The notes beneath the pieces were generated by a model. The model was not told the DNA's origin. It saw nothing but the letters and a program-made list of their open reading frames with translations, and searched no databases. This document shows, in pieces, positions 10,477 through 61,480 of a stretch of DNA of 64,000 nt. The translations under genes were made by a program, and so were the position numbers. The stretch is from positions 62,001 to 126,000 of the IMG/VR virus record IMGVR_UViG_3300017963_000192. One strand, given 5' to 3'. How positions within the stretch are numbered: position 1 is the stretch's first letter; the number at the start of each line of letters is the position of its first letter.

Positions 10477-10929
10477 CTAACTCCTTTTATTAATTTGTTG
10501 ATTTATAATCTTTCCAGATGCAAAAAGATTATAAATAGAATCCACAAATTCATCTACAATATCATCCCATTCTAATCCTTTAAATTTATTACATATTTTA
10601 ATGAATTTATCTATTTCTTTTTGAGGATATTTTACAAAAACTCTATGAGGATATTCCAACGTACTAAAACCATTCAGGAATTGAAGTGTAACATTATCTA
10701 AATAATCAAATTTCTTTGATATAATCATAGAACCAAGATTTATTTGAAACTCCATTAGTCTTCCCCAATCATATCCTATATGACTAGGACTACCTTTCTT
10801 ATTAGTTATATGAAAAGTTCTAAATAAATCACCAATTAAATGAGGCACTACTTGAGATATTACCTCAAGAGAATAACCCGATGTTCTATATCCTTTAATT
10901 CCTTTTAATAAGAAATCTTTGTCTGTCAT
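10477..10929 (-). CDS. Hypothetical protein
   Basis: ATGA overlap with the upstream spike gene. Confidence 0.55.
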   Translation of the reverse strand: MTDKDFLLKGIKGYRTSGYSLEVISQVVPHLIGDLFRTFHITNKKGSPSHIGYDWGRLMEFQINLGSMIISKKFDYLDNVTLQFLNGFSTLEYPHRVFVKYPQKEIDKFIKICNKFKGLEWDDIVDEFVDSIYNLFASGKIINQQINKRS

Positions 10930-21743: not shown

Positions 21744-23105
21744 TTAAACTGATAATGAGTATGTTCCTTCAGTATATTTATGAACGTATACTGAATAGTA
21801 TGAGTAAAAAATATTTACTGTGTCACGCCTATCAGTTGGCAACGTAACTTTAAGCGTGTCTATTTCTTCTATTATATTATTTGCTAAATATGTTTTAAAA
21901 AGTATTTCCAAATAATTTTGTACAACACCAGTATAATTTGGTCTGTTCTTTATTAAAGAACCTTTAAATGTTCTGTCCATTTGAGCAGCTACATCTTTAG
22001 CAATGTAATCTTTTGCAGTTATTATGTTGGTGTTATTTCTTTCTACTGTAGAATTGTCAGTTGTTAAATCATCAATTACTTTTGTTAATCCACCAGATGG
22101 TGCAAGTAAGTATAGACTACTTGAACCGCAGAGTTGCAATTGATATTCCGAATAGTAGTCATCATAATCTTCATCATATAACTCTATTCCAGGAATTACT
22201 TTATTTAGTAAAGTAGTTGTAGGAGCAATAAATGAATCCCTATAAGCTGCTACTGCGGAAGCTATAAAAGAACCATCAACAACGGCAGTCATTTCTTCAT
22301 TCGTATCTAAATCATTATAGTAATATTTAGCTCTTGTTGCATTTACAAAATTAACCCTTTCATGTTGAAATGATACTGCCTTTCCTCTTAATGATCCTGA
22401 ATCAGCTTCAGTTCCAACTGCTGTTCCAACATCGGCTCCCATATAAGTAACTCTGTACCTAGCATTATCTGGAAGACTCCTTTCTTCAACATGTGCTTTA
22501 AGAAGAGCTTGAACAGCAGAGGACGTTGTTAGGCAACAAACTGTTTGAATATCTCTGTATTTTATTAAATCTAATGCATTACCATAGTCGGTTGTTGTTT
22601 CTGTAGAGGGTACTTGTACAACGGCAATTTTAGGCAGGTTATAGTATCTTAAAGCGAGTTTTGAAATCATAACTAATTGATTGGCAGGAATATCATCTCC
22701 TAAATCTTCTGTTACATCTTCGTAGCTGGTAAATTCTTTATAAACATAATCGCTACTTGGTCTGTCGTATTTATAAGTAACATAATATGTTGCTCCTGGT
22801 GTTACTATACCAGATGAAGTCCATACAATCTGATCTCCAACAAGGTCAAAATGAGTTCCTTCAATATAATCTCCCAATCCTCTTTGTGAACCACATAGTA
22901 TAACAGAATCAATTCCTTCACTAGTATATGCTAAATCATCTGCCAGTCCAACAGCTCCTCTTGTGACTTCTTCGTTAGAAACTTTAACGGTATCACTTGC
23001 AACACCTATAAAACAAGGTGTTCGCTGTGTGGATGTAGGGTTCGCTGAAGCAGGATTAGTTACTTCTTCAATAATTGTTCCAGGTAATCTATATCCTATT
23101 GCCAT
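21744..23105 (-). CDS. Contractile tail sheath protein
   Basis: YRLPGTIIEE start, PCFIG, sheath C-terminal DDLTTD...IITAKDY and final IFYSYYSVY strand. Confidence 0.8.
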   Translation of the reverse strand: MAIGYRLPGTIIEEVTNPASANPTSTQRTPCFIGVASDTVKVSNEEVTRGAVGLADDLAYTSEGIDSVILCGSQRGLGDYIEGTHFDLVGDQIVWTSSGIVTPGATYYVTYKYDRPSSDYVYKEFTSYEDVTEDLGDDIPANQLVMISKLALRYYNLPKIAVVQVPSTETTTDYGNALDLIKYRDIQTVCCLTTSSAVQALLKAHVEERSLPDNARYRVTYMGADVGTAVGTEADSGSLRGKAVSFQHERVNFVNATRAKYYYNDLDTNEEMTAVVDGSFIASAVAAYRDSFIAPTTTLLNKVIPGIELYDEDYDDYYSEYQLQLCGSSSLYLLAPSGGLTKVIDDLTTDNSTVERNNTNIITAKDYIAKDVAAQMDRTFKGSLIKNRPNYTGVVQNYLEILFKTYLANNIIEEIDTLKVTLPTDRRDTVNIFYSYYSVYVHKYTEGTYSLSV

Positions 23106-29956: not shown

Positions 29957-30721
29957 TTATATTTTAGACTTTTTAAATTCCTTTAATTTTTTCTTTTCTA
30001 TTAGAGAAATACAAGCATCAACTACGTCAGAATCATACAATTTCCCCTTATTTTTACGAATTTCTTTTATTGCTTTTTTAAATCCTAAAGAAGGTCGATA
30101 AGGTCTGTGAGAAGACATTGCTTCAAGGACATCGGCTACCGCTAAAATACGAGTCTCTATAAGTATTTCATCACCTTTTAAACCTCTAGGATAACCTGAA
30201 CCATCCATTCTTTCATGATGTTGATATACTATTTCAGCAACAGGCCAAGGAAAATCTATTTCTTTTAATATTTTGTATCCTTTTAAAGGGTGTATTTTGA
30301 TTAAATCAAACTCTGTATCAGACAAGTCAGTTGGTTTAGATAAAATATCTGAAGGTAATCCTAATTTACCAATATCATGGACTGCTGCCGCTATTCTTAT
30401 TCCCTCAAGCATTCCATCTCTATTTTTAATTCCCATTTCCTCTCCAATATTTCTTGCAATATCAGCTACTTTTGATTGATGTCCAGCAGTATAAGGGTCA
30501 CGCATTTCGACAGCAGTAGCCATAGCTTGAACAACTCCAGAAAGGGCTTTCCTGAGTTTTTCTGGTATTTTTGTTTCTAATTCTATTTTTATGACTTCTT
30601 GTTTATTTTTTATGACGTGTTCGATTATTCTATAACCATTTTCTCTTAGAATGAATTTTAAATGTTCGTCTACAATAATACTATCTTTATCTATATAAAT
30701 ACCTTTATTGATATGTTTCAT
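29957..30721 (-). CDS. HD-GYP cyclic dinucleotide phosphodiesterase
   Basis: RDPYTAGH, HDIGK, HHERMDGSGYPRGLKGDEI, AVADVLEAMSSHRPYR all intact. Confidence 0.92.
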   Translation of the reverse strand: MKHINKGIYIDKDSIIVDEHLKFILRENGYRIIEHVIKNKQEVIKIELETKIPEKLRKALSGVVQAMATAVEMRDPYTAGHQSKVADIARNIGEEMGIKNRDGMLEGIRIAAAVHDIGKLGLPSDILSKPTDLSDTEFDLIKIHPLKGYKILKEIDFPWPVAEIVYQHHERMDGSGYPRGLKGDEILIETRILAVADVLEAMSSHRPYRPSLGFKKAIKEIRKNKGKLYDSDVVDACISLIEKKKLKEFKKSKI

Positions 30722-30736
30722 ATGTAGTCCTTTTAT

Positions 30737-31117
30737 TTATTCGTCTTTTAGACTTTTTGGAATTAATTTTTCAAGTCTACTAAGTCTAACAGCATTGTCT
30801 ATTGTTGCAAAAAGCATTTCTTTATCAAAAGGTTTTACTAAATACGTCTTTGGATTGTATTTATTAGCCTTTATTATAATTTCGTCATCATTCAATCCTG
30901 TTATGTAAATCAAAGGAGTATCTTCAAAATCCTCAAAACTGTTACTAATTCCACTGTCTACCAAGATAACATCGGGACTACTCTCTTCTATAGTTTTCGA
31001 AACCAGTTCTAAATCATTTGAAATCACTATTATTTCATTTTCAGAACCGCTAGTAACATACATATCAATTATTTCATTTACATCTGCGTTTTCACTCTCA
31101 ATTACAAGTATTCTCAT
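30737..31117 (-). CDS. Stand-alone response regulator receiver (REC) domain
   Basis: RILVIE, PDVILVD (phospho-Asp), IYITG, YLVKPF. Confidence 0.85.
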   Translation of the reverse strand: MRILVIESENADVNEIIDMYVTSGSENEIIVISNDLELVSKTIEESSPDVILVDSGISNSFEDFEDTPLIYITGLNDDEIIIKANKYNPKTYLVKPFDKEMLFATIDNAVRLSRLEKLIPKSLKDE

Positions 31118-31124
31118 AATAAAC

Positions 31125-31436
31125 CTACTTCCACAAAAGTTTTAATAAGGCAAATGACACGATTATTACTGTTTGTACTACAATAAAAATCGTTACTATT
31201 TGCGTTTTAAACTTTTGAAGTTCTTTATTAGATTTTTCCAATTCTTCAACTCGATGTCTTAACCCGTTTTTGCCGTCAACACCCATAAGGACAACCTCAA
31301 TTGTTTTCATACGATCAAGCATTTCTCCAACTAGTTTGGAATTTTCTTTTTGGTTGTCGTTAAGTTCCTGGAGTTCTTTTAACACTAAATCTCTGTAAGC
31401 TTTTTCGACATCTGATTTACTATATTCGTTTGACAT
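31125..31436 (-). CDS. Coiled-coil protein with a C-terminal TM helix
   Basis: GVDGKNGL coiled coil followed by the hydrophobic IVTIFIVVQTVIIVSFALL. Confidence 0.55.
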   Translation of the reverse strand: MSNEYSKSDVEKAYRDLVLKELQELNDNQKENSKLVGEMLDRMKTIEVVLMGVDGKNGLRHRVEELEKSNKELQKFKTQIVTIFIVVQTVIIVSFALLKLLWK

Positions 31437-31439
31437 TTT

Positions 31440-32279
31440 CTATTTCCTTTTCTTCCTTCTGTCTGTTCTTTTTGAATAATTTTTTGCACATGAAACATCT
31501 TTAATAAGAATTATAGCTATAAATTTTTGCTTATCGATTGTACATCCCCTTGTTCTTATCTCTAATAATTTGCAAATATTATCCTTGTTGCAGAACTCGA
31601 CATCAAAAGATCTTCTTTCTCCTTTATCTATTGCGGATATAATGCTTTTACAGCCTTCTTCCGTTACACCAATATCATTAAGATGTACTCCAACCATATC
31701 ATTGATATTCTCACATTCTGCTATATTACAAAAACTGGGATTAACATCTTCTATAATCAAATCTTGAGAACAAATTGCAATGCCTTCAGTAGTTAATTCA
31801 ACCAAACGTTTATACCGATTTTGACTAATTCTTAATTGTTCAACTGTCTCTTTTTTAGAAGTAACATTACGTTGCATACCTCTAAATCCTATTATTCTGT
31901 TGTCATTAGAGTTTTTTAAAACATCAACAGATGTTTCGACCCATATTTTAATTCCATCTTTTCTTATAACTTGCCAATCAGTAATTTCATTTTTTTCTTC
32001 AGTTTCATAAACTTTACTAAATTCTTTATAAATTTTTTCTGCTGTTTTTTCGTCTGTATATTCTTTATAATTCATTCCAAAAAGTTCGTGTCTTGAATAT
32101 CCATACATTTCACAAAGAGCACGATTAAAAAAAGTTAAATTACCTTCTAAATCAACTTCATAGTATCCCTCATCAATACTCTCTAAAATGTTTTCATATT
32201 TATCTTTTGACTCTTCCAACCTTCTTTCTAATTTATTAAGTTGTGTTGTTATTTGTTCTATTTCATTTAAGTATGTCAT
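31440..32279 (-). CDS. PAS-PAS sensor protein without an output domain
   Basis: YENILESIDEGYYEVDLEGNLTFFN...RKDG.KIWVE...RNVT.KK; second PAS from YKRLVELTTEGI. Confidence 0.88.
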   Translation of the reverse strand: MTYLNEIEQITTQLNKLERRLEESKDKYENILESIDEGYYEVDLEGNLTFFNRALCEMYGYSRHELFGMNYKEYTDEKTAEKIYKEFSKVYETEEKNEITDWQVIRKDGIKIWVETSVDVLKNSNDNRIIGFRGMQRNVTSKKETVEQLRISQNRYKRLVELTTEGIAICSQDLIIEDVNPSFCNIAECENINDMVGVHLNDIGVTEEGCKSIISAIDKGERRSFDVEFCNKDNICKLLEIRTRGCTIDKQKFIAIILIKDVSCAKNYSKRTDRRKKRK

Positions 32280-32293
32280 TTTATATATCCTAT

Positions 32294-32587
32294 CTACATT
32301 AATTTAAAAAACTTATCAAATGAACTGATTTTTAATAAATCAAACAAACCTTTATTTATATTTATCAAAGACACTTCTTTATCAAAAGATTTTTGTTTTT
32401 TTACCAATGCTACTAAAACACCTAATCCAGAAGAGTCCATACATTTAACATTTATCATATCCACAATTATATCTCTATCATTAGGAATTTCTGTTAATAA
32501 TTCTTTTTTGATTTTCACAATATTTTCTATACATAACGCATCTTCTACCACTATTATATATTTATCGTTTTCTATTTTTATTTCCAT
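32294..32587 (-). CDS. STAS anti-sigma factor antagonist (start trimmed to ATG 32587)
   Basis: IIVDMINVKCMDSSGLGVLV, SpoIIAA/RsbV-type motif. Confidence 0.88.
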   Translation of the reverse strand: MEIKIENDKYIIVVEDALCIENIVKIKKELLTEIPNDRDIIVDMINVKCMDSSGLGVLVALVKKQKSFDKEVSLININKGLFDLLKISSFDKFFKLM

Positions 32588-32795
32588 TTTTTGATTTCCT
32601 TTTTTCTTCTGTTGAAGAAAGTTCTTCTTGATAAGCAAAAGAATTTATAAGTTGTTCGTTTGTTAGCTTACCTTGTTTTATTAATATAAAACCCAACAAA
32701 CCTCCTTCGTGTCTTTGAATGTTAAGAGCTGTACTAACATCCTCCCTTGATACATATCTAAGTTTTATTAAAATTTCCCCAACTTTTTTATTCAT
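32562..32795 (-). CDS. Stand-alone MshEN-like c-di-GMP-binding protein (start trimmed to ATG 32795)
   Basis: KVGEILIKLRYVSREDVSTALNIQ...LLGFILIKQGKLTNEQL matches the tandem RLGxxL motif; AAGGA RBS. Confidence 0.75.
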   Translation of the reverse strand: MNKKVGEILIKLRYVSREDVSTALNIQRHEGGLLGFILIKQGKLTNEQLINSFAYQEELSSTEEKRKSKNGNKNRKR

Positions 32796-32805
32796 TATTT
32801 TTTCC

Positions 32806-33393
32806 TTACTTACCATTATTATCAAAATCATTCAGATAATTAATCGCATCTTCATATTCATCATACACTTTAAATAGGTTATACACGCTTAATCTTTTTG
32901 CAATTTCATATGATCTCCCTCTAAAACCATAAAAGGCGAGAGATCTATTACATTTTTTAAAATGTTCTGAAAGATGTATAAATACACCTACTCCAGATGA
33001 ATCGAATAAACTTAATTTGGAGCAATCTAGTATTGCATGTAAAGTTGTTTCGTATTTATTACAAATTATTTTATATGTTTCGAGAATGTTTTTTAAAGTA
33101 TTAGGGGTATTGTATATTGTAAGTTCTTTGAAATTTAATTTAATATTTAGAATGTTGTTTATTTTATCAAAAGAAATTGAATTGTCTAAAGAAACATCTC
33201 TTTTTTCTTTTTTATAAGGTTCACTTAATCTTTCAAGCCAATCACATGGTTTGTTAGAATTATTAATGCTATCAATCCCATCATTAGTGAAAGCATTAAA
33301 AAAATTAGGGTGTCTTTCCCAATCATATTTATGTTCGGAAACCAGGTTGTTATTCTCAAATTTATTTTCGAGTAAAGTTTTTTCATACTTCAT
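32806..33393 (-). CDS. STAS domain protein with an N-terminal extension
   Basis: AILDCSKLSLFDSSGVGVFI. Confidence 0.8.
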   Translation of the reverse strand: MKYEKTLLENKFENNNLVSEHKYDWERHPNFFNAFTNDGIDSINNSNKPCDWLERLSEPYKKEKRDVSLDNSISFDKINNILNIKLNFKELTIYNTPNTLKNILETYKIICNKYETTLHAILDCSKLSLFDSSGVGVFIHLSEHFKKCNRSLAFYGFRGRSYEIAKRLSVYNLFKVYDEYEDAINYLNDFDNNGK

Positions 33394-33397
33394 TACT

Positions 33398-33949
33398 TTA
33401 ATCTCCCGAATTTATCTCAATTATATTTAATCTTTCACAATCAAAAAAATTAAAAGGAGCCACTTCTGCTGAAACTATGTCGGGAAACAGATAAACACCT
33501 CCGTCTATATAACTATTAACAACAAGTTCTGTACAAACAACCGCTTTTTTATCGGCATCTCCAACTCTTTTTAATTTAAATAGATATTTTATTAATAATA
33601 ATAACAACTGTTTATATGAATAATGTTCTCCTTCTCTTTTTACAGCAGATTCAAGTATTTTTCTATGTATTTCATCATTCATCCCTTTGTATCGTGCTAT
33701 ATATAAAAGTACATCCTCTTTTTTGTATTCTTGTAGTTGTTTAATCACAACTCCAATGAAAGTTGCTTCTATCGTAATCCCGTTTCCTAAATATATTAAT
33801 GCATGCGAGGCTTTGTATTTTGATTTAATTTTTTTAAAAAAGGTTTCTTGGAAATATACAATAAATCTGCTTATTATGTTTTTCTTTTTGTATATTAATA
33901 ATATATCGCTATCTTTCAATAATTCTTTATATTGTAAATACTCGCTCAT
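33398..33949 (-). CDS. Permuted papain-like NlpC/P60 (YiiX/YebB-like) enzyme
   Basis: ASHALIY (His) before VVCTELV (Cys), with a YSY motif: the permuted order. Confidence 0.75.
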   Translation of the reverse strand: MSEYLQYKELLKDSDILLIYKKKNIISRFIVYFQETFFKKIKSKYKASHALIYLGNGITIEATFIGVVIKQLQEYKKEDVLLYIARYKGMNDEIHRKILESAVKREGEHYSYKQLLLLLIKYLFKLKRVGDADKKAVVCTELVVNSYIDGGVYLFPDIVSAEVAPFNFFDCERLNIIEINSGD

Positions 33950-34030: not shown

Positions 34031-34774
34031 TCATTTAAATGTTCTCACATAAAATTCTAATTCAGCATTTATATCTTTATCATGCAATACTCTTAATCTA
34101 ACTTGATTTGCATATGGATTTTCAGAATAATATTTAACATATTTAGGAGGAGCTTCAATTTCATAATGCTGATTTTGATACCATAATCGTTTGTGTTTTA
34201 CAAATGTCCAATTTCCTCCGTATGCCGGTGGAATGTTTGGAGCCATTATAACATATACTTCTATTGGAAATTCTCCTGCTGATGAACTTATAAGTTGTAT
34301 CCCACCTCCATCTAAGTAATAGCTAAAACTTGGCGTTATAGTAATTTCTGTTACTCCTGTACTTGTTCCCAAGTGTGTTGTTCCTGTTGATGTAGTAATA
34401 GTAACATTCTCTCCCGTATCTTCTCCATAATCAAGACTGTCGGTATCTCCAGTAGTGAAATATATAAAAGTCATTGCGAGAGTGCCTTCAACTGGTCTTG
34501 GTTTTGTTTTAGGAATGCCAGTCTCAGGTTCAATGGGAGCTATTGTTTGATTAGAAGTATCTTTATAGTTTGTTTCAAAATCGATTAAACCAGTAGAGGT
34601 ATCAATACTGTTAAGATGGCATTCATATCTAAGGTTTCCGTCTGTTACAAATATTTCATAGTACTTGTCAGAGTTTTCGGTTTCCTGCCTAAAATTGTAC
34701 TGTACTTTGTTCAGTATTGATTTTGTAGTACAAATAGCAATGAATTCATCATATTCCATTAATTCTTTATACAT
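34031..34774 (-). CDS. Hypothetical virion protein
   Basis: Thr-rich, D(F/Y)ExNY motif shared with neighbours, coupled stops/starts. Confidence 0.55.
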   Translation of the reverse strand: MYKELMEYDEFIAICTTKSILNKVQYNFRQETENSDKYYEIFVTDGNLRYECHLNSIDTSTGLIDFETNYKDTSNQTIAPIEPETGIPKTKPRPVEGTLAMTFIYFTTGDTDSLDYGEDTGENVTITTSTGTTHLGTSTGVTEITITPSFSYYLDGGGIQLISSSAGEFPIEVYVIMAPNIPPAYGGNWTFVKHKRLWYQNQHYEIEAPPKYVKYYSENPYANQVRLRVLHDKDINAELEFYVRTFK

Positions 34775-35424
34775 TATTTCTTCTCCACATAACTAAGAAC
34801 ATACCCTTTAGCAGTTAAATCACCAGTACCATTTCTTCTCTGTTGAAGAATTCTAATTCTACTACCTTTTTGATAATTTAAATCTAGATAAAGTGTTGAT
34901 ATGTTGTTGACATAGCTAAAATCTATATCTTTCATTGTGATACCGTCATCATCTACAATAACTTTCTTTAGGGAATTTAAAGGAGCTTGAAGAGCAACTT
35001 CATCATCAATTTTTACTCTTATTTTCTCAAGATTATCACATTTATACACAAACTCAGAGAACCATTTTTTCTCCGACCCAAAATCTATGTCATAAAATTC
35101 TGTCCAACCATCATCAGTACATTCGTGTGTAACATCTCCACTAGTAGAATCATATTCCCTTCTAAATCTATCTGATCTAAAAACATTATCTTTTATTTGG
35201 TTGTTGGCATTGGATGTATAATTAGCTTCATAGTCAATTACACTTGAAGCATGGCGCACTTCGTCTATGTAACATATATATAATAGATGTTCTCCATCTG
35301 GAGCAAACAAGGTATAATATTTAGCTCCTCCAGTAGATGTTATTATATGCTGATATTGAAGATTCTTTGTTTCAGAATCTAATACATGAGACTTATATTC
35401 AGTATATGTTAATTTAAGTTCCAT
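34774..35424 (-). CDS. Hypothetical virion protein
   Basis: N-terminus paralogous to 34031-34774 (DYEANY). Confidence 0.55.
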   Translation of the reverse strand: MELKLTYTEYKSHVLDSETKNLQYQHIITSTGGAKYYTLFAPDGEHLLYICYIDEVRHASSVIDYEANYTSNANNQIKDNVFRSDRFRREYDSTSGDVTHECTDDGWTEFYDIDFGSEKKWFSEFVYKCDNLEKIRVKIDDEVALQAPLNSLKKVIVDDDGITMKDIDFSYVNNISTLYLDLNYQKGSRIRILQQRRNGTGDLTAKGYVLSYVEKK

Positions 35425-37988
35425 CAGTAAACTTCCCTAAATGATAATGATGCGTGCATCGTTGATGATGTTCCTAACGACTTTCCTACTAAAACCAGGA
35501 TATCTCTATCTCCAGAATAATTAGACACAAGTTTTAAAAGCATTTCTGGTACTTCGCTTGCTAACTGATTTCTATCAGCACCTTGACTAGATACAAACAT
35601 ATCTTCTATTTCTTCTCCACCGCTATACGCAGATGCTGTTATATCATATTCAGCAATTGAATTTGTACCAGCAGATACCCAGGATGCTCCAGTAAGTGTC
35701 GCTCCATGAATAAGTTTAACATGAACCAATGTATTTGATTCATTGTATGTTTTAAAGGTTAATGGTAATATTTGTGCTCGTTTATACGTTTCTTTCAATC
35801 GTAAAGCGATAATAGGTACATACGTTGCTCCAACAACACGGTCAGCGGCACCTGTCGTAACACTCCTTGTAACACCTTTGGGGTTATACCCTCCCTCACT
35901 CTCAATTTCAACACATACGTTATCCATATATGTATTACTTGCTGTAGAAGATGTATTTTCTATTTCATATCGTAGTGGTAGATTAGCTGTCTGCATATAA
36001 ACTTTATCTATAATATTAGCATGTAGAAATTGGTGGATATAGTAGAATTCTCCATCTATACTAAATCCCATACGAACACGTCCCATACCTAACCACTGAA
36101 TGTCCAATATAAATATTTGACCTTTAGATACATCTACTGTAATAGCACTTTTACCAGTACCATCTAAAGTATCTATATTCCAGTCATCTTGTTGTACTTT
36201 ATTTTCTACAACAGAGCCAGTAGTATAGCTCCTTTCTACTACATACAAACCGCCAGTAGATGTTTGTTCAAAAAATACACCATTATAATCATCAAAGTAT
36301 CCAATTCTTTTTACAACACCAGCTTTTTCAGACCCCATTATTCCTGTCATGGCAATTCTGAGAGAATTATGTTCATAAAATGATGTTAAATACGTATTAC
36401 CATCAGGTACACCTATAGCAACAGTCCATTGATATCCAATAATTTCTATAGACTCAACGATATCCCATCTTAAACTATCTTGTATATTTTTAAATAAATA
36501 TTTGAATTTAGTACTTTCTTTTCTATTTTTAATTTTATTATAGACTTTTTCTACATCTTCTTCTTTTCCGTAAATTCCAATCTCTTTATAGAATAATTCT
36601 ATATCTTTTTTTGAATGTAATGATAGTATATAAGCTCTGCTACATTCTTTACCATTACATTTAGGAATTTTTGAATGTATGTTTCCATGTATTCCAAACT
36701 TTAGTAAAAGTTCCTTTATATCTTTCACGAGTTGTTCTGAAATAGAACAATACCCAATCTCATCTTTAAACGCCCATCCATCAGTAGAATACAATCGAGA
36801 AAGAAACGTAGTTATAATTTCTTTTGGAGATTCAAATATATCATTTGGAATAAATTTATATGCGGAAGATTTCCCCAATAATTCAACTTTTCGTAAAAGT
36901 TTAGTAATTCCATTTTTTCCCTTTCTACTTCCATTTTTATAAACTACATGATAAGAATTACTATCGCCTTTCTTCTTTTTCAACACACAATCATATTGTC
37001 CTACTAAAGACTCAAATTCGTCTAATTGGCTTCCTTTGTTTTGACTAAATGTTACATGATGTGCAGATATTCCACCATCTCCTATAAGATAAGCTAAAAT
37101 TTTAGCATCTGATTCTGTTAAATTATTATTAGTTCCAAAAATTGGTAATGTATCAGCTATAGCAACAAAATCTCCTATTTTAATATTTTCAAGATTAGTC
37201 CATTCCTTAATATTGAAGTGTGGTTTATTTCCTTTTTTCCAAAAAGTTTTATAATATTTTTTTCCTACCCACAGTGGATGTTGAGCATTACCACATAATT
37301 CATTTCCAGATTTAGTTTTTATTTTATATATAGGTTCATAAGCATTCCATTCTGCTATAGCATCTACTTCTATTCTTTTTCCATCTCTAACAGTTAAAAG
37401 TTTAAACTCTGTATCAACTAAATCTTTAGCTTGTATTCTTCTACCATCAGCCAATGGTATATAATCAGAAGCTAATCTGCATTTACCTGGCTGATAATTA
37501 AAATACTCTTTAGTTTGTCGGATTACTTTATCACCATTTGCAGTTGTACATTCCAATCTTGTAGAAGCCTCGTTACTTCGATAAGTAGCTGTTCCTCCAC
37601 CAGTAAGTACGTTATTCCAAAATAATGGTTGGTCATTAAAAATTTGTGTTGAATCAAATAATGAATGAGGATTGCCAGTTCTTAATCGTGAGAAAGCATC
37701 AAGGTTAAAACTATCTGAAAACGTGGTTGTAACAGATATAGCACTATCCACACCCCTAGATGCTCCATCAGCATAATTATTTATATAGTCATCATAATCA
37801 GCAGTGCCATATTTTATTATTGTATAATAAGTAAATTCGTTAGATTGCCTTACACGAACAGTAAGATCGCTAACATCACTTTTAAGAGCGTGGTCGTATC
37901 CAAATTTAGGATTTGCATCTATTATAGCTTTTAAATCTAACCATTTTGGTATTTCTATCGATTGTACTATACTTCCTGACGCTGCCAT
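35424..37988 (-). CDS. Probable virion protein (lectin-like beta fold) interrupted by an intein (about 482 aa after splicing)
   Basis: Splicing gives FNYQPGK|SLRIAMTG; DAFSRLR, QWLGMGRVRMG, NLPLRYEI motifs seen in phage virion proteins. Confidence 0.65.
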   Translation of the reverse strand: MAASGSIVQSIEIPKWLDLKAIIDANPKFGYDHALKSDVSDLTVRVRQSNEFTYYTIIKYGTADYDDYINNYADGASRGVDSAISVTTTFSDSFNLDAFSRLRTGNPHSLFDSTQIFNDQPLFWNNVLTGGGTATYRSNEASTRLECTTANGDKVIRQTKEYFNYQPGKCRLASDYIPLADGRRIQAKDLVDTEFKLLTVRDGKRIEVDAIAEWNAYEPIYKIKTKSGNELCGNAQHPLWVGKKYYKTFWKKGNKPHFNIKEWTNLENIKIGDFVAIADTLPIFGTNNNLTESDAKILAYLIGDGGISAHHVTFSQNKGSQLDEFESLVGQYDCVLKKKKGDSNSYHVVYKNGSRKGKNGITKLLRKVELLGKSSAYKFIPNDIFESPKEIITTFLSRLYSTDGWAFKDEIGYCSISEQLVKDIKELLLKFGIHGNIHSKIPKCNGKECSRAYILSLHSKKDIELFYKEIGIYGKEEDVEKVYNKIKNRKESTKFKYLFKNIQDSLRWDIVESIEIIGYQWTVAIGVPDGNTYLTSFYEHNSLRIAMTGIMGSEKAGVVKRIGYFDDYNGVFFEQTSTGGLYVVERSYTTGSVVENKVQQDDWNIDTLDGTGKSAITVDVSKGQIFILDIQWLGMGRVRMGFSIDGEFYYIHQFLHANIIDKVYMQTANLPLRYEIENTSSTASNTYMDNVCVEIESEGGYNPKGVTRSVTTGAADRVVGATYVPIIALRLKETYKRAQILPLTFKTYNESNTLVHVKLIHGATLTGASWVSAGTNSIAEYDITASAYSGGEEIEDMFVSSQGADRNQLASEVPEMLLKLVSNYSGDRDILVLVGKSLGTSSTMHASLSFREVY
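36366..37481 (-). mobile_element. Intein (372 aa) with LAGLIDADG homing endonuclease
   Basis: Starts CRLASDYIPLADG, block B NAQHPL, ILAYLIGDGG and FLSRLYSTDG, ends YEHN with Ser at +1. Confidence 0.9.
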
Positions 37989-40171: not shown

Positions 40172-40723
40172 TTAAGTTCTAACCCATTCTATTGAAGAAG
40201 TTCTCCCACTTGTCCTTGTTATTGTACCAGTAAGAGTTTCTCCAATTATTACATTACCATCATCATCATATTGTTTATAAACTATTTGACTTATTCTTCC
40301 ACTTGTTCTAGTGTACTCAACACTTCTAATTTTAGTGCTTTTACCAGAATCGGTGTAATATATAACAGAAGAAATTCTTCCTCCAATCCTTTCTATTTCA
40401 CAGTAGCTGTCTTCTGCTATATTATGTACTAATTGGTCAAGTGACCTATGCTGACTGGCTGTTATACCACCAGTACTCGAATTAAAATTTATTGTTACTG
40501 CCCCAGTACCTTCTGTACCACCCGTCCATTCTATTGATATATCATCTCCAGCTATTATATTTGTAACTAATGCCTCTCCTGTAGAAGAAGTTATATTTAT
40601 ATCTGAACGACCTATTGTACCATCTTTTATATCTTCAGTTTCTAAAGAATCATCTTGGACTTGAGTACCAGTAACGGTCTCGTCCATAATTTGACGGTCT
40701 CCCCTGATTTTACTTCTAGACAA
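40172..40723 (-). CDS. Virion protein, N-terminus paralogous to 43191-45233 (start trimmed to TTG 40723)
   Basis: MSRSKIRGDRQIMD versus MASTKIRGNTQIMD; GGAG 9 nt upstream. Confidence 0.6.
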   Translation of the reverse strand: MSRSKIRGDRQIMDETVTGTQVQDDSLETEDIKDGTIGRSDINITSSTGEALVTNIIAGDDISIEWTGGTEGTGAVTINFNSSTGGITASQHRSLDQLVHNIAEDSYCEIERIGGRISSVIYYTDSGKSTKIRSVEYTRTSGRISQIVYKQYDDDGNVIIGETLTGTITRTSGRTSSIEWVRT

Positions 40724-41870
40724 TTCTTTTATCTCCCAAAAGAAATTCCATACATTCAAATATAGATTTTTCCTTATTAGTTAAATAATGTTTTTTTGTA
40801 ATTCTATATATCTTTACCCCTTGTAAGGAATCTTTTATTTCAACTTCTCTTATATAATCTTTAGTTTGTTGAGATTCTTTAATGTGATACTCTTCGTCAA
40901 ATTCAATTATTTTGTTAAGTTCTTCTACATAAAAGTCTAAATATCTAAATCCATGTTTACTATTAACAGGAACAATATATTCATTATTTTCTTCATTTAC
41001 TCCATTTGTTGAATAATAAACAGTATAATCATTTAAGTACTCTTCTAAACTATTAAAAAGTTCTTGTGATTCAATTGAAAATCTTGGTGCATAATGCATC
41101 CATTTACCATATTTCATTTTTGTAGTTTGTATTACTTTTCGCCTAATTTCTTTTGAAGACATTGGAGTGTCTCCACCATATCTTCTATTATTTGTAGCTT
41201 TAACTTTCTCTTTTATCTCTTCACATTTTAATGGGTTATCTACACCATAATTATTTATATAAGATTCTCTTTTCTTTAATTTTATATTTTCGTTTTGAGA
41301 TGGATTCTCCACTCCATATTTATCTATCATAGTTGTTTTTATTTTATCTTTAATTTCTTTTGATTGAAAGACATTAGTTACCCCGTATCTGTCTTTGCAA
41401 GTTTTAGCGTGTTTGTCTTTAATTACTTTCGATTGCATTGGGTGGGTAACGCCATAGTTTTTAATTAGTGATTTTCTTATAGTAGTTTTAACTTCTTCAG
41501 ATTGGAATACATTATCAACACCATATTTACTCTTAACACTATTTATAGCATTATCTGTAAAAAATCCAGTTGTAACACCATGATTCCTTAAACACGTCTC
41601 TCGTTTTTTATCTTTTATTTCCTCTAATTGAGATATATTTTCAACTCCATACTTTTCTAATGTTGTTCTCTTTCTCTTCTCCTTATTATTATAACTTAAA
41701 CTCCCATATTTTTCTATTTTAGACTTCCTTGCCTTTTCCTGTACTAATTTATTGTGCATTGGAAAACAAGAAACACAAATGGAATAAACTCTACCATTTT
41801 TGTCTTCCTTTAGATTATCTGAAGTATTACAATATTTACACTTTTTATTCATGTTACTAATATGACTCAT
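40716..41870 (-). CDS. Putative free-standing endonuclease with YGVxN repeats and a PD-(D/E)XK/Vsr-like C-terminus
   Basis: Many KYGVENxSQ-type repeats; RYLDFYVEELNKIIEFDEEYH. Confidence 0.7.
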   Translation of the reverse strand: MSHISNMNKKCKYCNTSDNLKEDKNGRVYSICVSCFPMHNKLVQEKARKSKIEKYGSLSYNNKEKRKRTTLEKYGVENISQLEEIKDKKRETCLRNHGVTTGFFTDNAINSVKSKYGVDNVFQSEEVKTTIRKSLIKNYGVTHPMQSKVIKDKHAKTCKDRYGVTNVFQSKEIKDKIKTTMIDKYGVENPSQNENIKLKKRESYINNYGVDNPLKCEEIKEKVKATNNRRYGGDTPMSSKEIRRKVIQTTKMKYGKWMHYAPRFSIESQELFNSLEEYLNDYTVYYSTNGVNEENNEYIVPVNSKHGFRYLDFYVEELNKIIEFDEEYHIKESQQTKDYIREVEIKDSLQGVKIYRITKKHYLTNKEKSIFECMEFLLGDKRIV

Positions 41871-49044: not shown

Positions 49045-49344
49045 TCATAAACCTTTATCGCATTTTTTACGACAAAGTTTGATACAAAGATTTTTTGTAT
49101 TGATTTCTTTTGTTTCTAGCATATTTGCATCATCAACAGATTTGACTTTATGAAGAATTTCCCAACTGAAGTTATCTTCACCATACTTAGCTATAGCTTT
49201 GTGTATGTAACTGTGATTTCTAGATGTCTTTTTTCTAGCTAAATGGTTATGTTGCACTCTCCTTTTGTTTAATGATAGTGATGTTTTGCCTATGTAACAT
49301 TTTCCATTAATTATATTTGTTGCCTTATATACTAAATAACTCAT
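49045..49344 (-). pseudogene. Truncated GIY-YIG endonuclease (catalytic domain only)
   Basis: MSYLVYKATNIINGKCYIGKT...AIAKYG...WEIL, then an early stop with no DNA-binding tail. Confidence 0.6.
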
Positions 49345-49360
49345 TAAGTTTTCCATGTAT

Positions 49361-49849
49361 CTAGAAATAATTGCTTCTACCATAATCATCTTTAAGTCTA
49401 ACTATATCGTTTTCATCATTCTCATCTCCATCTTCTACTCCTAATGCAACGTCCAATATCATTCCATATTTTTTATTCCCATTATAAATTGCTCTGTGTA
49501 CAACATGTTTTTTAAATCCAAAAATGTCTCCTTTTTTTGCTTTTATTGTAATTAAATTATTATTTAAAAATTCCTCAAGTAATTTAAATTTAGGTTCTAC
49601 ATCTGGCATATTAAGTATTTTTTTAGAAACAGGCTTTTTGCTATACTTTATTATAAAATCATTATCTAATATTAAATATAACTGATATCTTTTAAAATGA
49701 AATTGGAGAGATAATGATTGCTTCGGTTTTACATATAATACTTTTGTTGTACTTTTAACATTATCAGCATATAATCCATAGTGCCCCCACGGTCTTTCTA
49801 CTTCTAATGTTGAAAATGGTTTAATGAATTTATTTCTCTTTAATTTCAT
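49361..49849 (-). CDS. Mannose-6-phosphate isomerase type II-like cupin
   Basis: VERPWG, VKPKQSLSLQFH, DIVRLKDDYGR, as in the C-terminal domain of ManC/AlgA. Confidence 0.8.
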   Translation of the reverse strand: MKLKRNKFIKPFSTLEVERPWGHYGLYADNVKSTTKVLYVKPKQSLSLQFHFKRYQLYLILDNDFIIKYSKKPVSKKILNMPDVEPKFKLLEEFLNNNLITIKAKKGDIFGFKKHVVHRAIYNGNKKYGMILDVALGVEDGDENDENDIVRLKDDYGRSNYF

Positions 49850-49864
49850 CTTTTTCTCACCTCC

Positions 49865-50221
49865 CTAGCACATGTTATTCCATCTTCTGACTGCATCAAT
49901 TTCTTCTTCTGTCTTTGGACCACTTGCCTTACAAGTTTCGCATTTAACTTGTTTATATTTAGTATCATGATATACATATATAAGAACATGTGTTGATTTA
50001 CAATATGGACAAGGTTTTAAATTCAAGTCTATATCCCAAAACATAATATCTTCAGTATAGGGGATAAAACAGGATGTACTACCATGTCTCCCTACATATC
50101 TGTATATCCATCCACTAGGAACTCTTATAAACGTTCCTTCATAATTATTCTTTTTTTGGATGTTTACTGACTCTCCAATTTTCATTTTAAATAATCTTTT
50201 TGCTAATTTATTTTCTTTCAT
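49865..50221 (-). CDS. Protein with a C-terminal Lar-like (restriction alleviation) Zn finger
   Basis: LKPCPYC...CETCKASGP...AVRRWN. Confidence 0.65.
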   Translation of the reverse strand: MKENKLAKRLFKMKIGESVNIQKKNNYEGTFIRVPSGWIYRYVGRHGSTSCFIPYTEDIMFWDIDLNLKPCPYCKSTHVLIYVYHDTKYKQVKCETCKASGPKTEEEIDAVRRWNNMC

Positions 50222-50571
50222 ATCTCTTTTTTAAGACTTTCTAAAGCCTCCTCCAAATTATCGTGTATGTCTATTAATTTATCAAAATTAGTAATAGCCA
50301 ACACTTGTTTACATAGTTCGTTTGGGTTGAACACTTTAAAGGCTAATCCCTCCTTATCTAGTTTTCTTTTATTTATAATAAACACTTTTAATGCAGAACT
50401 ACCTATGAATTCCACATCTTCAAGATCAACCAAAATATTGGCTTTTTTATGTTTTTTCATAATTTCTTCAAGAACATTCTCAAAACTGTCCGATAAATCT
50501 AAATCCATTTTTCCAGACAATTCTACAACAATGATGTTTTCCTCTACTTCTTGATATTCTACACTACCCAT
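50218..50571 (-). CDS. STAS anti-sigma factor antagonist
   Basis: LSGKMD, ILVDLEDVEFIGSSAL. Confidence 0.88.
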   Translation of the reverse strand: MGSVEYQEVEENIIVVELSGKMDLDLSDSFENVLEEIMKKHKKANILVDLEDVEFIGSSALKVFIINKRKLDKEGLAFKVFNPNELCKQVLAITNFDKLIDIHDNLEEALESLKKEI

Positions 50572-51303: not shown

Positions 51304-51657
51304 TTATTTCTCCTTTGATTTAATAAATTCTACCGCCTCTTCTTCATTATTACAAACTTTTATAACCTCATCAATACCTGTAATGTTAAACACTTTTTTA
51401 CAAGTAGCATTTGCATCAAATAATACAAGTTTCAGCTTATTGCAAATCAATTCTTTATATGCAATTATAAAAACTTTTATAGCATAACTATTTAAATATC
51501 CTACATCGAATAAATCCATTAGTATGTGACAATTAGGATTATCTTCTATAGCCTCATTTACCATATCTTCAAAGTCTTTATCTAATGTTATATCAATATT
51601 TCCAGATGGTGTCAATATAATTATATCGTCTCCTATCTTTTTATATGCTGATTTCAT
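51304..51657 (-). CDS. STAS anti-sigma factor antagonist
   Basis: PSGNID, ILMDLFDVGYLNSYAI. Confidence 0.85.
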   Translation of the reverse strand: MKSAYKKIGDDIIILTPSGNIDITLDKDFEDMVNEAIEDNPNCHILMDLFDVGYLNSYAIKVFIIAYKELICNKLKLVLFDANATCKKVFNITGIDEVIKVCNNEEEAVEFIKSKEK

Positions 51658-61373: not shown

Positions 61374-61400
61374 GATATTTTTTTATTGGTTTATAAAATT

Positions 61401-61472
61401 CGTCCCTGACAGGAATCGAACCTGCTATACATAGTTTTAGAGACTATTGCCTAGCCATTTGGCTTCAGGGAC
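61401..61472 (-). tRNA. tRNA with anticodon CUA (amber suppressor-type), no encoded CCA
   Basis: GTCCCTG AA GCC AAATGGCTA GGC A ATAGT CTCTAAA ACTAT GTATA GCAGG TTCGATT CCTGT CAGGGAC G: full cloverleaf. Confidence 0.92.
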
Positions 61473-61480
61473 GAGTAACT

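What the first reader, a model, noticed from the sequence alone, without database searches (positions are those of the whole stretch)
29957..33393. Phage-encoded second-messenger and partner-switching island inserted among virion genes
Seen: six signalling genes in 3.4 kb, co-oriented: STAS, MshEN-like, STAS, PAS-PAS, (TM protein), REC, HD-GYP with intact catalytic motifs. Established: HD-GYP enzymes hydrolyse c-di-GMP and some hydrolyse cGAMP, MshEN binds c-di-GMP, and REC, PAS and HD-GYP are usually fused in one bacterial protein. Here they are separate modules, and no kinase or cyclase is in the window. Inference: the phage rewires host c-di-GMP state (motility, biofilm, receptor display) or degrades immune cyclic nucleotides.
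Basis: partly seen in the sequence, partly recalled or inferred. Interest (0 to 1): 0.75.

Follow-up and report, generated by a model that had tools for sequence, protein, structure and literature searches.

The report
Conserved phage signalling operon: STAS, MshEN, HD-GYP
A large uncultured sediment phage carries a conserved eight-gene operon of single-domain bacterial signalling proteins ending in a cyclic-di-GMP-degrading enzyme, which most likely lets the virus reset its host's second-messenger and stress-switch circuits, though no function has been tested.

Summary
Window 29957-33949 (minus strand) is a tightly packed operon: C92/NlpC-like hydrolase, STAS, a 77-aa MshEN-type c-di-GMP-binding mini-protein, STAS, PAS-PAS, a tail-anchored membrane protein, a degenerate REC, and an HD-GYP with every metal ligand and the GYP motif.

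The record is a 217.7-kb IMG/VR phage. It also holds three more STAS genes, a canonical REC and a sigma factor. No STAS kinase, PP2C phosphatase, histidine kinase or GGDEF cyclase was found.

It is not a recent host fragment:
- Composition matches the rest of the phage.
- The cassette recurs in the same order in at least two divergent relatives, once beside the same flanking gene.
- Cassette genes are under purifying selection (dN/dS 0.11-0.34).
- The eight phage HD-GYPs form one old clade (support 100/99).

Bacterial relatives are fused REC-PAS-HD-GYP proteins, so the phage version is a disaggregated form.

Best reading: a regulated c-di-GMP drain plus STAS, REC and MshEN modules that depend on host kinases. 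Degradation of immune nucleotides is a weaker rival. Expression, substrate and host are unknown. Phage HD-GYPs were already reported. The STAS/MshEN/PAS cassette appears unreported.

The parts
33398..33949 (-). First gene of the operon: 183-aa permuted papain-like (Peptidase_C92 / NlpC-P60 clan) hydrolase
   Evidence: Atlas structure matches to C92/NlpC_P60 clusters, TM 0.80-0.86. Weak Pfam NLPC_P60 hit and phrog_1128 at 2.7e-13. Its orthologue (30% id) lies inside the cassette of L129. An 81-nt gap lies upstream and only 4 nt separate it from STAS1.
32806..33393 (-). STAS1: 195 aa, about 65-aa N-terminal extension plus STAS domain with a DSSG motif
   Evidence: Pfam STAS 1.2e-8. The Atlas structure places the STAS fold at residues 63-195. 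Orthologues in L129 and L003 are 27-29% identical.
32562..32795 (-). 77-aa stand-alone MshEN-type (53-residue) c-di-GMP-binding motif protein with a basic tail
   Evidence: NCBIfam NF053729 at 48.5 bits, above the cut-off of 38. PDB hits are PilF GSPII and MshE-N. Read directly: two 24-residue motifs with a 5-residue spacer. The first Arg is Lys in motif I and Leu in motif II. The single-sequence AF2 model is low-confidence but has four helices.
32294..32587 (-). STAS2: 97-aa single-domain anti-sigma-antagonist-like protein (DS52SG); its start overlaps the MshEN gene by 26 nt
   Evidence: Pfam STAS 1.3e-11. TIGR00377 at 45.4 bits, below the cut-off of 53.45. S52 is the only invariant column among 64 homologues. 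The nearest of 1.84 billion representatives is 38% identical.
31440..32279 (-). PAS-PAS sensor protein, 279 aa, with an N-terminal helical leader
   Evidence: PAS_9 2.9e-18 in two stretches. The N-terminal PAS is up to 44% identical to PAS repeats fused upstream of bacterial HD-GYPs. Its TAG stop is followed in frame by the next gene.
31125..31436 (-). 103-aa coiled-coil protein with a C-terminal transmembrane helix (tail-anchored)
   Evidence: A homologue lies between PAS and HD-GYP in every cassette seen: L003, L008, L102, L129. The wider family has 431 members, mostly phage. 29 of 50 members hit phrog_1103, of unknown function. XhlA-like is only a lead.
30737..31117 (-). 126-aa REC domain with a degenerate acidic pocket (E7-S8); D54, T73 and K95 kept; alpha-3 shortened
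   Evidence: Pfam Response_reg at 26.5 bits, below the cut-off of 30.2. It aligns with the REC of bacterial REC-PAS-HD-GYP proteins. A 68%-identical copy lies directly upstream of the HD-GYP in L103. REC is absent from the L003, L008, L102 and L129 cassettes.
29957..30721 (-). 254-aa stand-alone HD-GYP phosphodiesterase, the enzymatic output of the operon
   Evidence: HD_5 1.4e-40. All metal ligands and the GYP motif are invariant across 70 homologues. AF2 pLDDT 87.7. Best structural match is DvhD HD-GYP bound to c-di-GMP. It has DPYTAGH, with Tyr where PmGH has the third-metal Glu.
50218..50571 (-). Extra STAS gene (117 aa) outside the island, next to a Lar-like restriction-alleviation gene
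   Evidence: TIGR00377 at 72.9 bits, above the cut-off. Found by the genome search. The Lar hit is on 49865-50221.
51304..51657 (-). Extra STAS gene (117 aa) outside the island
   Evidence: TIGR00377 at 61.9 bits, above the cut-off.

Best explanation
Window 33949-29957 (minus strand) is one operon that belongs to a clade of low-GC, uncultured sediment phages.

Shown:
- It encodes a signal-transduction pathway taken apart into single-domain proteins.
- Its only recognisable enzyme with a signalling substrate is an HD-GYP phosphodiesterase. That enzyme descends from bacterial REC-PAS-HD-GYP or multi-PAS-HD-GYP enzymes and keeps a complete catalytic site.
- A PAS-PAS protein and a small tail-anchored membrane protein always accompany the HD-GYP. 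This lineage adds a degenerate REC.
- Upstream lie two STAS proteins with the conserved phosphorylatable serine. They flank a 77-aa MshEN-type c-di-GMP-binding motif protein.

Inferred:
- During infection the HD-GYP hydrolyses host c-di-GMP, under control of the PAS protein and the membrane protein.
- The MshEN mini-protein binds c-di-GMP, either as a sensor for the STAS pair or as a sponge.
- The STAS and REC proteins have no phage kinase or phosphatase. They therefore act on or through host anti-sigma-type Ser kinases and histidine kinases, as decoys or adaptors.
- The net effect would be a low-c-di-GMP host state (pili, motility, matrix, receptor display) and a perturbed stress or sigma-factor programme that favours the phage.
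For: - Domain calls.
- Operon packing: 4-15 nt gaps or overlaps, with 81-nt and 121-nt gaps at the borders, and an SD-like motif before each gene.
- No GGDEF, HATPase_c, HATPase_c_2 or SpoIIE in the 217.7-kb record. Nothing of the kind was on record in 8.7 kb beyond its right end.
- The genome holds five STAS genes, two RECs and a sigma factor.
- Cassette order is conserved in L003 and L129. It is partly seen in L008, L102 and L103. L129 has the same flanking gene.
- dN/dS is 0.11-0.34 for every cassette gene between L003 and L129. pN is about a third of pS between the window and L103.
- GC, GC3 and codon use are typical of the phage.
- The phage HD-GYP clade is monophyletic (100/99) on a long stem.
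- Bacterial relatives are fused REC-PAS-HD-GYP proteins.
- The nearest solved structure is c-di-GMP-bound DvhD PAS/HD-GYP.
- An isolated MshEN four-helix bundle can bind c-di-GMP (PMC12002112).
Against: - No expression data: no RNA run was listed.
- Substrate is untested. By sequence the top PDB hit is the cGAMP-specific V-cGAP3, and the enzyme has Tyr where PmGH has its third-metal Glu.
- The MshEN motif II starts with Leu instead of Arg, and Arg-to-Ser at that position abolishes binding in PilF GSPII-A. Motif I has Lys for Arg, and Arg for the turn Gly.
- MshEN is absent from the L003 and L129 cassettes, which carry Cys-rich mini-proteins there instead.
- The REC lacks one Mg-binding Asp, and sister cassettes have no REC.
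- The island STAS proteins score below NCBIfam's anti-sigma-antagonist cut-off.
- The complex prediction of STAS2 with B. subtilis SpoIIAB gave no answer.
- The host is unknown, so whether it uses c-di-GMP or partner switching cannot be checked.
Confidence: 0.5

Rival explanations
1. Counter-defence nuclease of immune nucleotides. The HD-GYP destroys 3'3'-cGAMP or other CBASS or type III CRISPR signals, and the stand-alone STAS proteins act as decoy substrates for STAS-kinase regulators of immune operons (CapK/CapS-like or VapK/VapS-like).
For: - V-cGAP3 (a 3'3'-cGAMP-specific enzyme) is the best sequence hit in the PDB, and both share the PYTAGH motif.
- Iyer et al. 2021 predicted jumbo-phage HD-GYPs to be counter-nucleotide defences (PMC7824862).
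- Microcystis phage MaAM05 has an HD-GYP annotated as a cGAMP phosphodiesterase.
- STAS-kinase pairs control immune operons (bioRxiv 10.64898/2026.02.02.703251).
- One extra STAS gene lies next to a Lar-like anti-restriction gene.
Against: - The enzyme sits among sensor and regulator genes (PAS, REC, STAS, MshEN). I judge that an odd setting for a scavenger that should act at once.
- Structural best matches are c-di-GMP enzymes, with V-cGAP3 at rank 15.
- The operon carries a c-di-GMP-binding motif.
- It lies in the virion-gene block, co-oriented with structural genes.
- No PADLOC-related family matched.
Confidence: 0.2
2. A phage-internal timing circuit. The STAS proteins and RECs regulate the phage's own sigma factor or its lysis machinery, using the membrane protein and the C92/NlpC-like hydrolase. 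c-di-GMP and the PAS-sensed signal would report host state to set late transcription or lysis time.
For: - The phage encodes a sigma-70-family protein.
- Every cassette contains a small tail-anchored membrane protein of a large phage family, with an XhlA-like lead.
- A C92/NlpC-like hydrolase lies in or next to the cassette, and L129 has a membrane-anchored NlpC/P60-like gene just after the HD-GYP.
Against: - No anti-sigma kinase was found in the phage.
- The sigma gene is about 100 kb away on the other strand.
- The XhlA likeness is a language-model lead only. Pfam gives nothing and phrog_1103 has no known function.
- The C92 protein is not shown to be a lysin.
Confidence: 0.15
3. A recently captured, non-functional piece of host DNA, or an assembly chimera.
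For: All domains are typical bacterial signalling domains. They have no PHROG family, apart from a REC hit. No RNA evidence exists.
Against: - GC, GC3 and codon use match the phage, not the 45-55% GC relatives.
- All reading frames are intact with SD-like motifs.
- The cassette is conserved in divergent phages.
- dN/dS is 0.11-0.34.
- The nearest STAS2 relative among 1.84 billion representatives is 38% identical.
- The phage HD-GYP clade is monophyletic.
- The same sequence occurs in several assemblies, in one contig without differences.
Confidence: 0.02

Closest known systems
Bacterial REC-PAS-HD-GYP and multi-PAS-HD-GYP c-di-GMP phosphodiesterases (RpfG-like; DvhD, PDB 9rbz/9rc0; PmGH, 4mcw)
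   Same: The catalytic domain is 57-64% identical to many bacterial enzymes. All metal ligands and the GYP motif are present. The phage REC and PAS align with the REC and PAS of those proteins.
   Different: In the phage the REC, PAS and HD-GYP are three separate genes in a different order, with a membrane-protein gene between them. The HD-GYP keeps only a short beta-alpha-beta-beta remnant before its linker helix. The REC acidic pocket is degenerate.
HD-GYP genes of jumbo phages (Iyer et al. 2021, Viruses 13:63) and other IMG/VR phage HD-GYPs
   Same: A phage-encoded HD-GYP. The kind has been noted before and predicted to target cyclic nucleotides. About 20 IMG/VR loci and 29 GenBank phage records carry one.
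   Different: The other viral HD-GYPs are mostly fused REC-HD-GYP proteins. They branch elsewhere in the tree, which points to independent captures. They have no STAS within 6 kb, and only 1 of 12 such records has any STAS. None has the MshEN motif.
Partner-switching anti-sigma antagonists (SpoIIAA, RsbV; HsbA of Pseudomonas, which links STAS to a diguanylate cyclase)
   Same: Single-domain STAS proteins with the conserved Ser in a DSSG motif. Best NCBIfam hits are 'anti-sigma factor antagonist' and SpoIIAA. The HsbA link is from my own knowledge, not tested here.
   Different: No cognate kinase, phosphatase or anti-sigma factor is encoded in the phage. The island copies score below the NCBIfam cut-off. 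No binding partner is known.
MshEN / GSPII c-di-GMP receptor domain of MshE, PilB/PilF and NfrB
   Same: The 53-residue double motif with a 5-residue spacer scores above the curated NCBIfam cut-off and aligns to MshE residues 7-64.
   Different: It stands alone at 77 aa, with no ATPase or glycosyltransferase and no C-terminal subdomain. The two stacking Arg residues are Lys and Leu, so binding is uncertain.
V-cGAP3 (VCA0931), the 3'3'-cGAMP-specific HD-GYP of Vibrio cholerae (PDB 5z7c)
   Same: Top sequence hit in the PDB, E 6.8e-39. Both share the PYTAGH motif and lack the third-metal Glu.
   Different: V-cGAP3 has a tandem HD-GYP architecture. Structural similarity is lower than to c-di-GMP enzymes. 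Substrate cannot be read from sequence.

Membership tests
HD-GYP phosphodiesterases (Pfam HD_5) | Profile match above the curated cut-off | tested here: met
   HD_5 at 139.2 bits against a cut-off of 27.2, E 1.4e-40.
HD-GYP phosphodiesterases (Pfam HD_5) | Metal-ligand set H...HD...H...HH...D and the HHExxDGxGYP motif | tested here: met
   H81, H115, D116, H144, H168, H169, D197 and G174-S-G-Y-P178 are present. They are invariant or nearly so in 70 homologues.
HD-GYP phosphodiesterases (Pfam HD_5) | Hydrolysis of c-di-GMP (or of another cyclic dinucleotide) | not testable with these tools
   Needs an enzyme assay. The nearest structures are c-di-GMP enzymes. The nearest PDB sequence is a cGAMP enzyme.
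HD-GYP trinuclear subgroup (PmGH type) | Glu ligand of the third metal in the DPExxxH motif | tested here: not met
   The phage has DPYTAGH, with Tyr in place of Glu, as V-cGAP3 does (alignment).
MshEN c-di-GMP-binding domain | Two 24-residue motifs separated by 5 residues; profile match above the curated cut-off | tested here: met
   NF053729 at 48.5 bits against 38, covering model positions 2-53 of 53. Spacer RHEGG is read directly. The older Pfam MshEN model gave no hit.
MshEN c-di-GMP-binding domain | Conserved Arg at the start of each motif, plus the Gly and Gln contacts | tested here: inconclusive
   The Gly at motif position 3 and the terminal Gln are kept in both motifs. Arg is Lys in motif I, which the relaxed motif allows, and Leu in motif II, which it does not. 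Arg-to-Ser there kills binding in PilF GSPII-A.
MshEN c-di-GMP-binding domain | Measured c-di-GMP binding | not testable with these tools
   Needs ITC or DRaCALA.
STAS anti-sigma-factor antagonists (partner switching) | STAS fold or profile | tested here: met
   Pfam STAS is above its cut-off for both island proteins. TIGR00377 is above its cut-off for three other STAS genes of the genome but below it for the two island copies.
STAS anti-sigma-factor antagonists (partner switching) | Conserved phosphorylatable Ser (DS*SG) | tested here: met
   The Ser is present in all five STAS proteins of the genome and in the two L003 STAS proteins in that alignment. It is the only invariant column in 64 homologues.
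STAS anti-sigma-factor antagonists (partner switching) | Cognate GHKL Ser kinase/anti-sigma factor and PP2C phosphatase in the same genome | tested here: not met
   No HATPase_c_2, HATPase_c or SpoIIE match in the 217.7-kb record. The record is about 88% complete.
STAS anti-sigma-factor antagonists (partner switching) | Binding to an anti-sigma kinase | tested here: inconclusive
   The complex prediction with B. subtilis SpoIIAB scored 0.01. The tool's verdict was 'no answer'.
Response-regulator receiver (REC) | Profile match and the D-D / D / T / K residue set | tested here: inconclusive
   26.5 bits against a cut-off of 30.2. D54, T73 and K95 are kept. The acidic pair is E7-S8 and alpha-3 is shortened. 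The second REC of the genome is canonical at 65.5 bits.
XhlA-type lysis-associated membrane proteins | Profile match to PF10779 | tested here: not met
   No Pfam XhlA hit for 50 family members. 29 of 50 hit phrog_1103, of unknown function. Only an Atlas feature lead exists.

The most novel reading that the evidence does not exclude
This would be the first viral partner-switching module. The phage would deploy stand-alone STAS, REC and MshEN domains as decoys, together with a regulated HD-GYP. The decoys would capture host anti-sigma-type Ser kinases (including STAS-kinase regulators of immune operons), phosphorelays and the c-di-GMP pool at once. A c-di-GMP-gated interaction between the MshEN mini-protein and the flanking STAS proteins would be its core.
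Probability: 0.2. Interest if true: 0.85.

Novelty: new variant of a known kind. Interest (0 to 1): 0.62.

Why it matters
Phages are known to carry single host-takeover genes, and HD-GYPs in jumbo phages have been noted before. A conserved, selected operon that assembles five kinds of bacterial signalling domains as separate small proteins, with no kinase or cyclase of its own, suggests something further. It suggests that some phages plug into host second-messenger and partner-switching networks rather than only destroying a signal.

If confirmed, it would give:
- a natural set of minimal domain-level inhibitors or adaptors for c-di-GMP and STAS-kinase signalling;
- a test case for how fused sensor-enzyme proteins work when split;
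- a possible link between c-di-GMP state and phage decisions such as receptor display, superinfection exclusion, lysis timing or defence suppression.

Tried and rejected
- blastn of the region against GenBank phages: no match.
- tblastn of STAS2 against GenBank phages: no match.
- PHROGs: no family for STAS, MshEN, PAS or HD-GYP.
- PADLOC: nothing relevant.
- The Pfam MshEN model missed the 77-aa protein. NCBIfam and PDB searches found it.
- The metagenome and genome scans with the HD-GYP alignment used generic motifs. They returned ordinary bacterial HD-GYPs, useful for the tree and for architectures but not for finding more cassettes.
- The word-based homologue search for the REC found only itself.
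- RNA runs: none was listed.
- Complex prediction of STAS2 with SpoIIAB: no answer, so it is not evidence either way.
- The single-sequence AF2 model of the MshEN protein was too poor (pLDDT 59) for a fold search.
- The promoter and terminator scan was at chance level in this AT-rich DNA.
- TAG read-through: I considered it because of a CUA-anticodon tRNA and an in-frame PAS-TAG-TM junction, and rejected it as a designed fusion. TAG-as-sense does not raise coding density. In-frame juxtaposition is as common after TAA. PAS and TM are out of frame in L003 and L008.
- I called the Cys-rich mini-proteins of L003 and L129 'two-CW-like' by eye. Pfam gave no support, so I make no such claim.
- Host or donor identification failed. 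The phage HD-GYP clade joins an unresolved polytomy of many phyla.

Full report
**What the sequence is.**
The window is bases 62001-126000 of a single 217,703-base IMG/VR virus record. The record is linear and CheckV estimates it 88% complete. GC is about 31% and nearly all window genes lie on the minus strand. PHROGs finds a tail sheath (21744-23105), a baseplate wedge subunit (6952-8412) and a virion structural protein (35424-37988). That last gene carries a LAGLIDADG insert. So this is a large tailed phage, and the finding lies in its structural-gene block.

The same sequence occurs without a single difference in other assemblies. In two sequencing runs, which may be one data set filed twice, it lies as one piece in a 56-kb contig. 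It is therefore not an assembly chimera.

**Checking the observation.**
- STAS1, 32806-33393: Pfam STAS E 1.2e-8.
- STAS2, 32294-32587: 1.3e-11.
- PAS-PAS, 31440-32279: PAS_9 2.9e-18, two stretches.
- A coiled-coil protein with a C-terminal membrane helix, 31125-31436.
- REC, 30737-31117: 26.5 bits, under Pfam's 30.2 cut-off.
- HD-GYP, 29957-30721: HD_5 1.4e-40.

The 'MshEN-like' call was the least secure, because Pfam gave nothing. It holds up in three ways.
- phmmer against the PDB finds the GSPII domains of Thermus PilF (6.6e-14) and the N-domain of V. cholerae MshE (6.4e-5). It aligns residues 2-59 to MshE 7-64.
- NCBIfam's 53-position model 'c-di-GMP_motif, MshE-related' scores 48.5 bits against a curated cut-off of 38.
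- Read directly, the protein is two 24-residue motifs joined by the expected five residues.

The HD-GYP has H81, H115-D116, H144, H168-H169, D197 and the HHERMDGSGYP motif. These are invariant or nearly so in 70 homologues.

**The unit is larger than the finding.**
Gene spacing inside is 4-15 bases or overlapping. The first real gaps are 81 bases upstream of the 183-aa gene at 33398-33949 and 121 bases after the HD-GYP. That 183-aa protein is a permuted papain-like hydrolase of the Peptidase_C92 / NlpC-P60 kind. Atlas structure matches give TM 0.80-0.86. Its orthologue sits inside the cassette of a related phage. I therefore read 33949-29957 as one eight-gene operon. Each gene has a purine-rich Shine-Dalgarno-like motif upstream.

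**The rest of the genome.**
Family searches over the whole record find five STAS genes:
- the two island copies;
- window 50218-50571 and 51304-51657;
- one at record position 10900-11223.

They also find a second, canonical REC at record position 11558-11965, next to that last STAS. Three of the STAS proteins pass NCBIfam's anti-sigma-factor-antagonist cut-off. The two island copies do not. The phage also encodes a sigma-70-family protein.

There is no match to GGDEF, HATPase_c, HATPase_c_2 (the RsbW/SpoIIAB kinase type) or SpoIIE/PP2C. None was on record in 8.7 kb that another contig adds beyond the record's right end. The phage thus has many substrates and adaptors of signalling and none of the enzymes that would drive them.

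**Is it a recent, dead capture? No.**
- GC, GC3 and codon usage of the island genes fall within the spread of the phage's other genes.
- The HD-GYP belongs to a group of eight stand-alone proteins of 241-254 aa, 62-71% identical. They share an N-terminal extension that bacterial enzymes lack.
- Their contigs show the same gene order.
  - L003: STAS, two Cys-rich mini-proteins, STAS, PAS, membrane protein, 42-aa membrane peptide, HD-GYP.
  - L129: as L003, with a third STAS and the C92-like gene inside. The cassette sits two genes (a Metallophos gene intervening) downstream of a homologue (42% identical) of the window's 247-aa gene at 34031-34774, which in the window directly precedes the operon.
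  - L008 and L102: PAS, membrane protein, HD-GYP.
  - L103: a 68%-identical REC directly before the HD-GYP.
- Between the window and those relatives the HD-GYP is about 70% identical, but the STAS and PAS orthologues only 26-31%.
- Between L003 and L129, every cassette gene has dN/dS of 0.11-0.34. Between the window and L103, pN is about a third of pS.
- STAS2 has no relative closer than 38% identity among 1.84 billion representative proteins.
- In a maximum-likelihood tree the eight phage HD-GYPs form one clade (support 100/99) on a long stem. That stem rises from an unresolved set of bacterial enzymes of many phyla. Other viral HD-GYPs fall elsewhere.

The cassette is old, inherited within a phage clade, and kept by selection.

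**Where the parts came from.**
The closest bacterial proteins are REC-PAS-HD-GYP enzymes of about 460 aa and multi-PAS-HD-GYP enzymes. They come mostly from Thermodesulfobacteriota (Syntrophales, Smithella) and other sediment anaerobes, and are 57-64% identical in the catalytic domain.
- The phage REC aligns with their REC.
- The N-terminal PAS of the phage PAS protein is up to 44% identical to their PAS repeats.
- The first ~50 residues of the phage HD-GYP align with the end of their PAS and the linker helix.
- In the AlphaFold model (pLDDT 87.7) those residues form a small beta-alpha-beta-beta unit before the long helix.

The split is a stable, conserved state, not a frameshift.

**What the parts can probably do.**
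- HD-GYP. The best structural matches are DvhD HD-GYP bound to c-di-GMP (TM 0.84 by target), PmGH and PA4781. V-cGAP3 ranks 15th. By sequence alone V-cGAP3 and PmGH score alike. The enzyme has Tyr where PmGH has its third-metal glutamate, as V-cGAP3 does. Substrate cannot be settled here.
- MshEN mini-protein. It keeps the glycine and glutamine contacts of both motifs. It has Lys for the first stacking arginine and Leu for the second. In PilF GSPII-A a serine at that second position abolishes binding, while an isolated four-helix bundle with a good motif binds well (PMC12002112; PMC5013675). Binding is plausible but uncertain.
- REC. It keeps the phospho-acceptor Asp54, Thr73 and Lys95. It has Glu-Ser in place of the acidic pair and a shortened alpha-3.
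- STAS. All seven phage STAS proteins aligned keep the serine that anti-sigma kinases phosphorylate. It is the only invariant column in a 64-sequence alignment.
- A complex prediction of STAS2 with B. subtilis SpoIIAB returned 'no answer' and counts neither way.

**Most likely mechanism (about 0.5).**
The operon is a regulated c-di-GMP drain with attached adaptor modules. The HD-GYP lowers host c-di-GMP. The PAS protein, the membrane protein and, in this lineage, the REC tune it. The MshEN mini-protein reads or soaks up c-di-GMP. The STAS and REC proteins work through host kinases, since the phage has none.

The steps that are shown are the gene content, the conservation, the selection and the descent from fused enzymes. 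Every functional step is inferred.

Three points favour c-di-GMP over immune nucleotides:
- the c-di-GMP-binding motif in the same operon;
- the sensor-rich setting;
- the structural neighbours.

**Rivals.**
- Counter-defence by degrading cGAMP or oligoadenylates, as Iyer et al. predicted for jumbo-phage HD-GYPs (PMC7824862). STAS decoys against STAS-kinase regulators of immune operons would fit here too (CapK/CapS). One extra STAS gene lies beside a Lar-like anti-restriction gene. Confidence about 0.2.
- A phage-internal circuit for its sigma factor or for lysis. The cassette always holds a small membrane protein of a large phage family, and hydrolase genes lie close by. Confidence about 0.15.
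- Dead host DNA: about 0.02.

**Novelty.**
Phage HD-GYPs are on record. GenBank phages hold 29 and IMG/VR about 20. Those are mostly fused REC-HD-GYP proteins with no STAS within 6 kb. Of 12 other viral records tested, most of them carrying an HD-GYP, one had a STAS and none the MshEN motif. Full-text searches found no paper describing phage STAS or partner-switching genes. I rate it a new variant of a known kind.

**Limits.**
- The host is unknown.
- There are no expression data.
- The record is incomplete. A 234.7-kb contig that carries the identical HD-GYP protein is on record.
- The relatives are short metagenome contigs.

Noticed in passing
window 61400-61473 (-): A tRNA with anticodon CUA, an amber suppressor that ARAGORN labels 'Pyl'. 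It lies apart from the phage's cluster of 13 tRNAs. TAG-as-sense does not raise coding density, and in-frame gene pairs are no commoner after TAG than after TAA, so there is no sign of genome-wide recoding. Occasional read-through is not excluded.
   Followed up: partly
window 31436-31442 (-): The PAS gene ends in TAG and is followed by AAA ATG of the membrane-protein gene in the same frame. With the suppressor tRNA this could yield a membrane-anchored PAS-PAS fusion. In L003 and L008 the two genes are out of frame, so it is probably chance.
   Followed up: yes
window 50218-50571 and 51304-51657 (-); record G000 10900-11965 (outside the window): Three further STAS genes and a canonical REC. 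The REC is separated from its STAS by a Cys-rich 69-aa gene. The STAS at 50218-50571 abuts a Lar-like restriction-alleviation gene (49865-50221).
   Followed up: partly
window 35424-37988 (-): An 854-aa virion structural protein (phrog_1645) is interrupted by an intein-like insert with a LAGLIDADG homing-endonuclease domain. A separate homing-endonuclease gene lies at 40716-41870 and a GIY-YIG (SegE-like) gene at 49045-49389.
   Followed up: no
record G000 195043-195825 (+), outside the window (locus L124:1321-2103): A divergent sigma-70-family protein of 260 aa encoded by the phage. Region 2 is above the Pfam cut-off and region 4 is weak.
   Followed up: partly
L003:8338-8761 and L129:3022-3406: In the sister cassettes the position of the MshEN gene, between the two STAS genes, is held by two small Cys-rich proteins (79-85 and 55-63 aa). 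They match no Pfam family and are under strong purifying selection (pN about 0.10-0.17, pS saturated).
   Followed up: partly
L002 / L105 (IMGVR_UViG_3300002446_000948): An 11.7-kb viral contig of higher GC carries a fused 741-aa multi-PAS-HD-GYP gene next to an IS200-like transposase gene and portal, protease and capsid genes. It may be a prophage edge or a separate capture.
   Followed up: no
window 34031-35424 (-): Two adjacent genes (216 and 247 aa) both resemble the same 232-aa protein of L129, and no family matches either. They are the conserved upstream neighbours of the cassette.
   Followed up: no
window 1626-3707 (-): A 693-aa protein with a radical-SAM N-terminus and similarity to the anaerobic ribonucleotide reductase large subunit. 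This hints at an anaerobic host.
   Followed up: no
L129:1775-2518 and L129:6744-7496: In the relative L129 the cassette is preceded by a calcineurin-like phosphoesterase (Metallophos) gene. After one intervening gene (160 aa, L129:6241-6723) it is followed by a membrane-anchored NlpC/P60-like gene. The window phage has Metallophos genes only far from the island (record 149 kb and 165 kb).
   Followed up: partly
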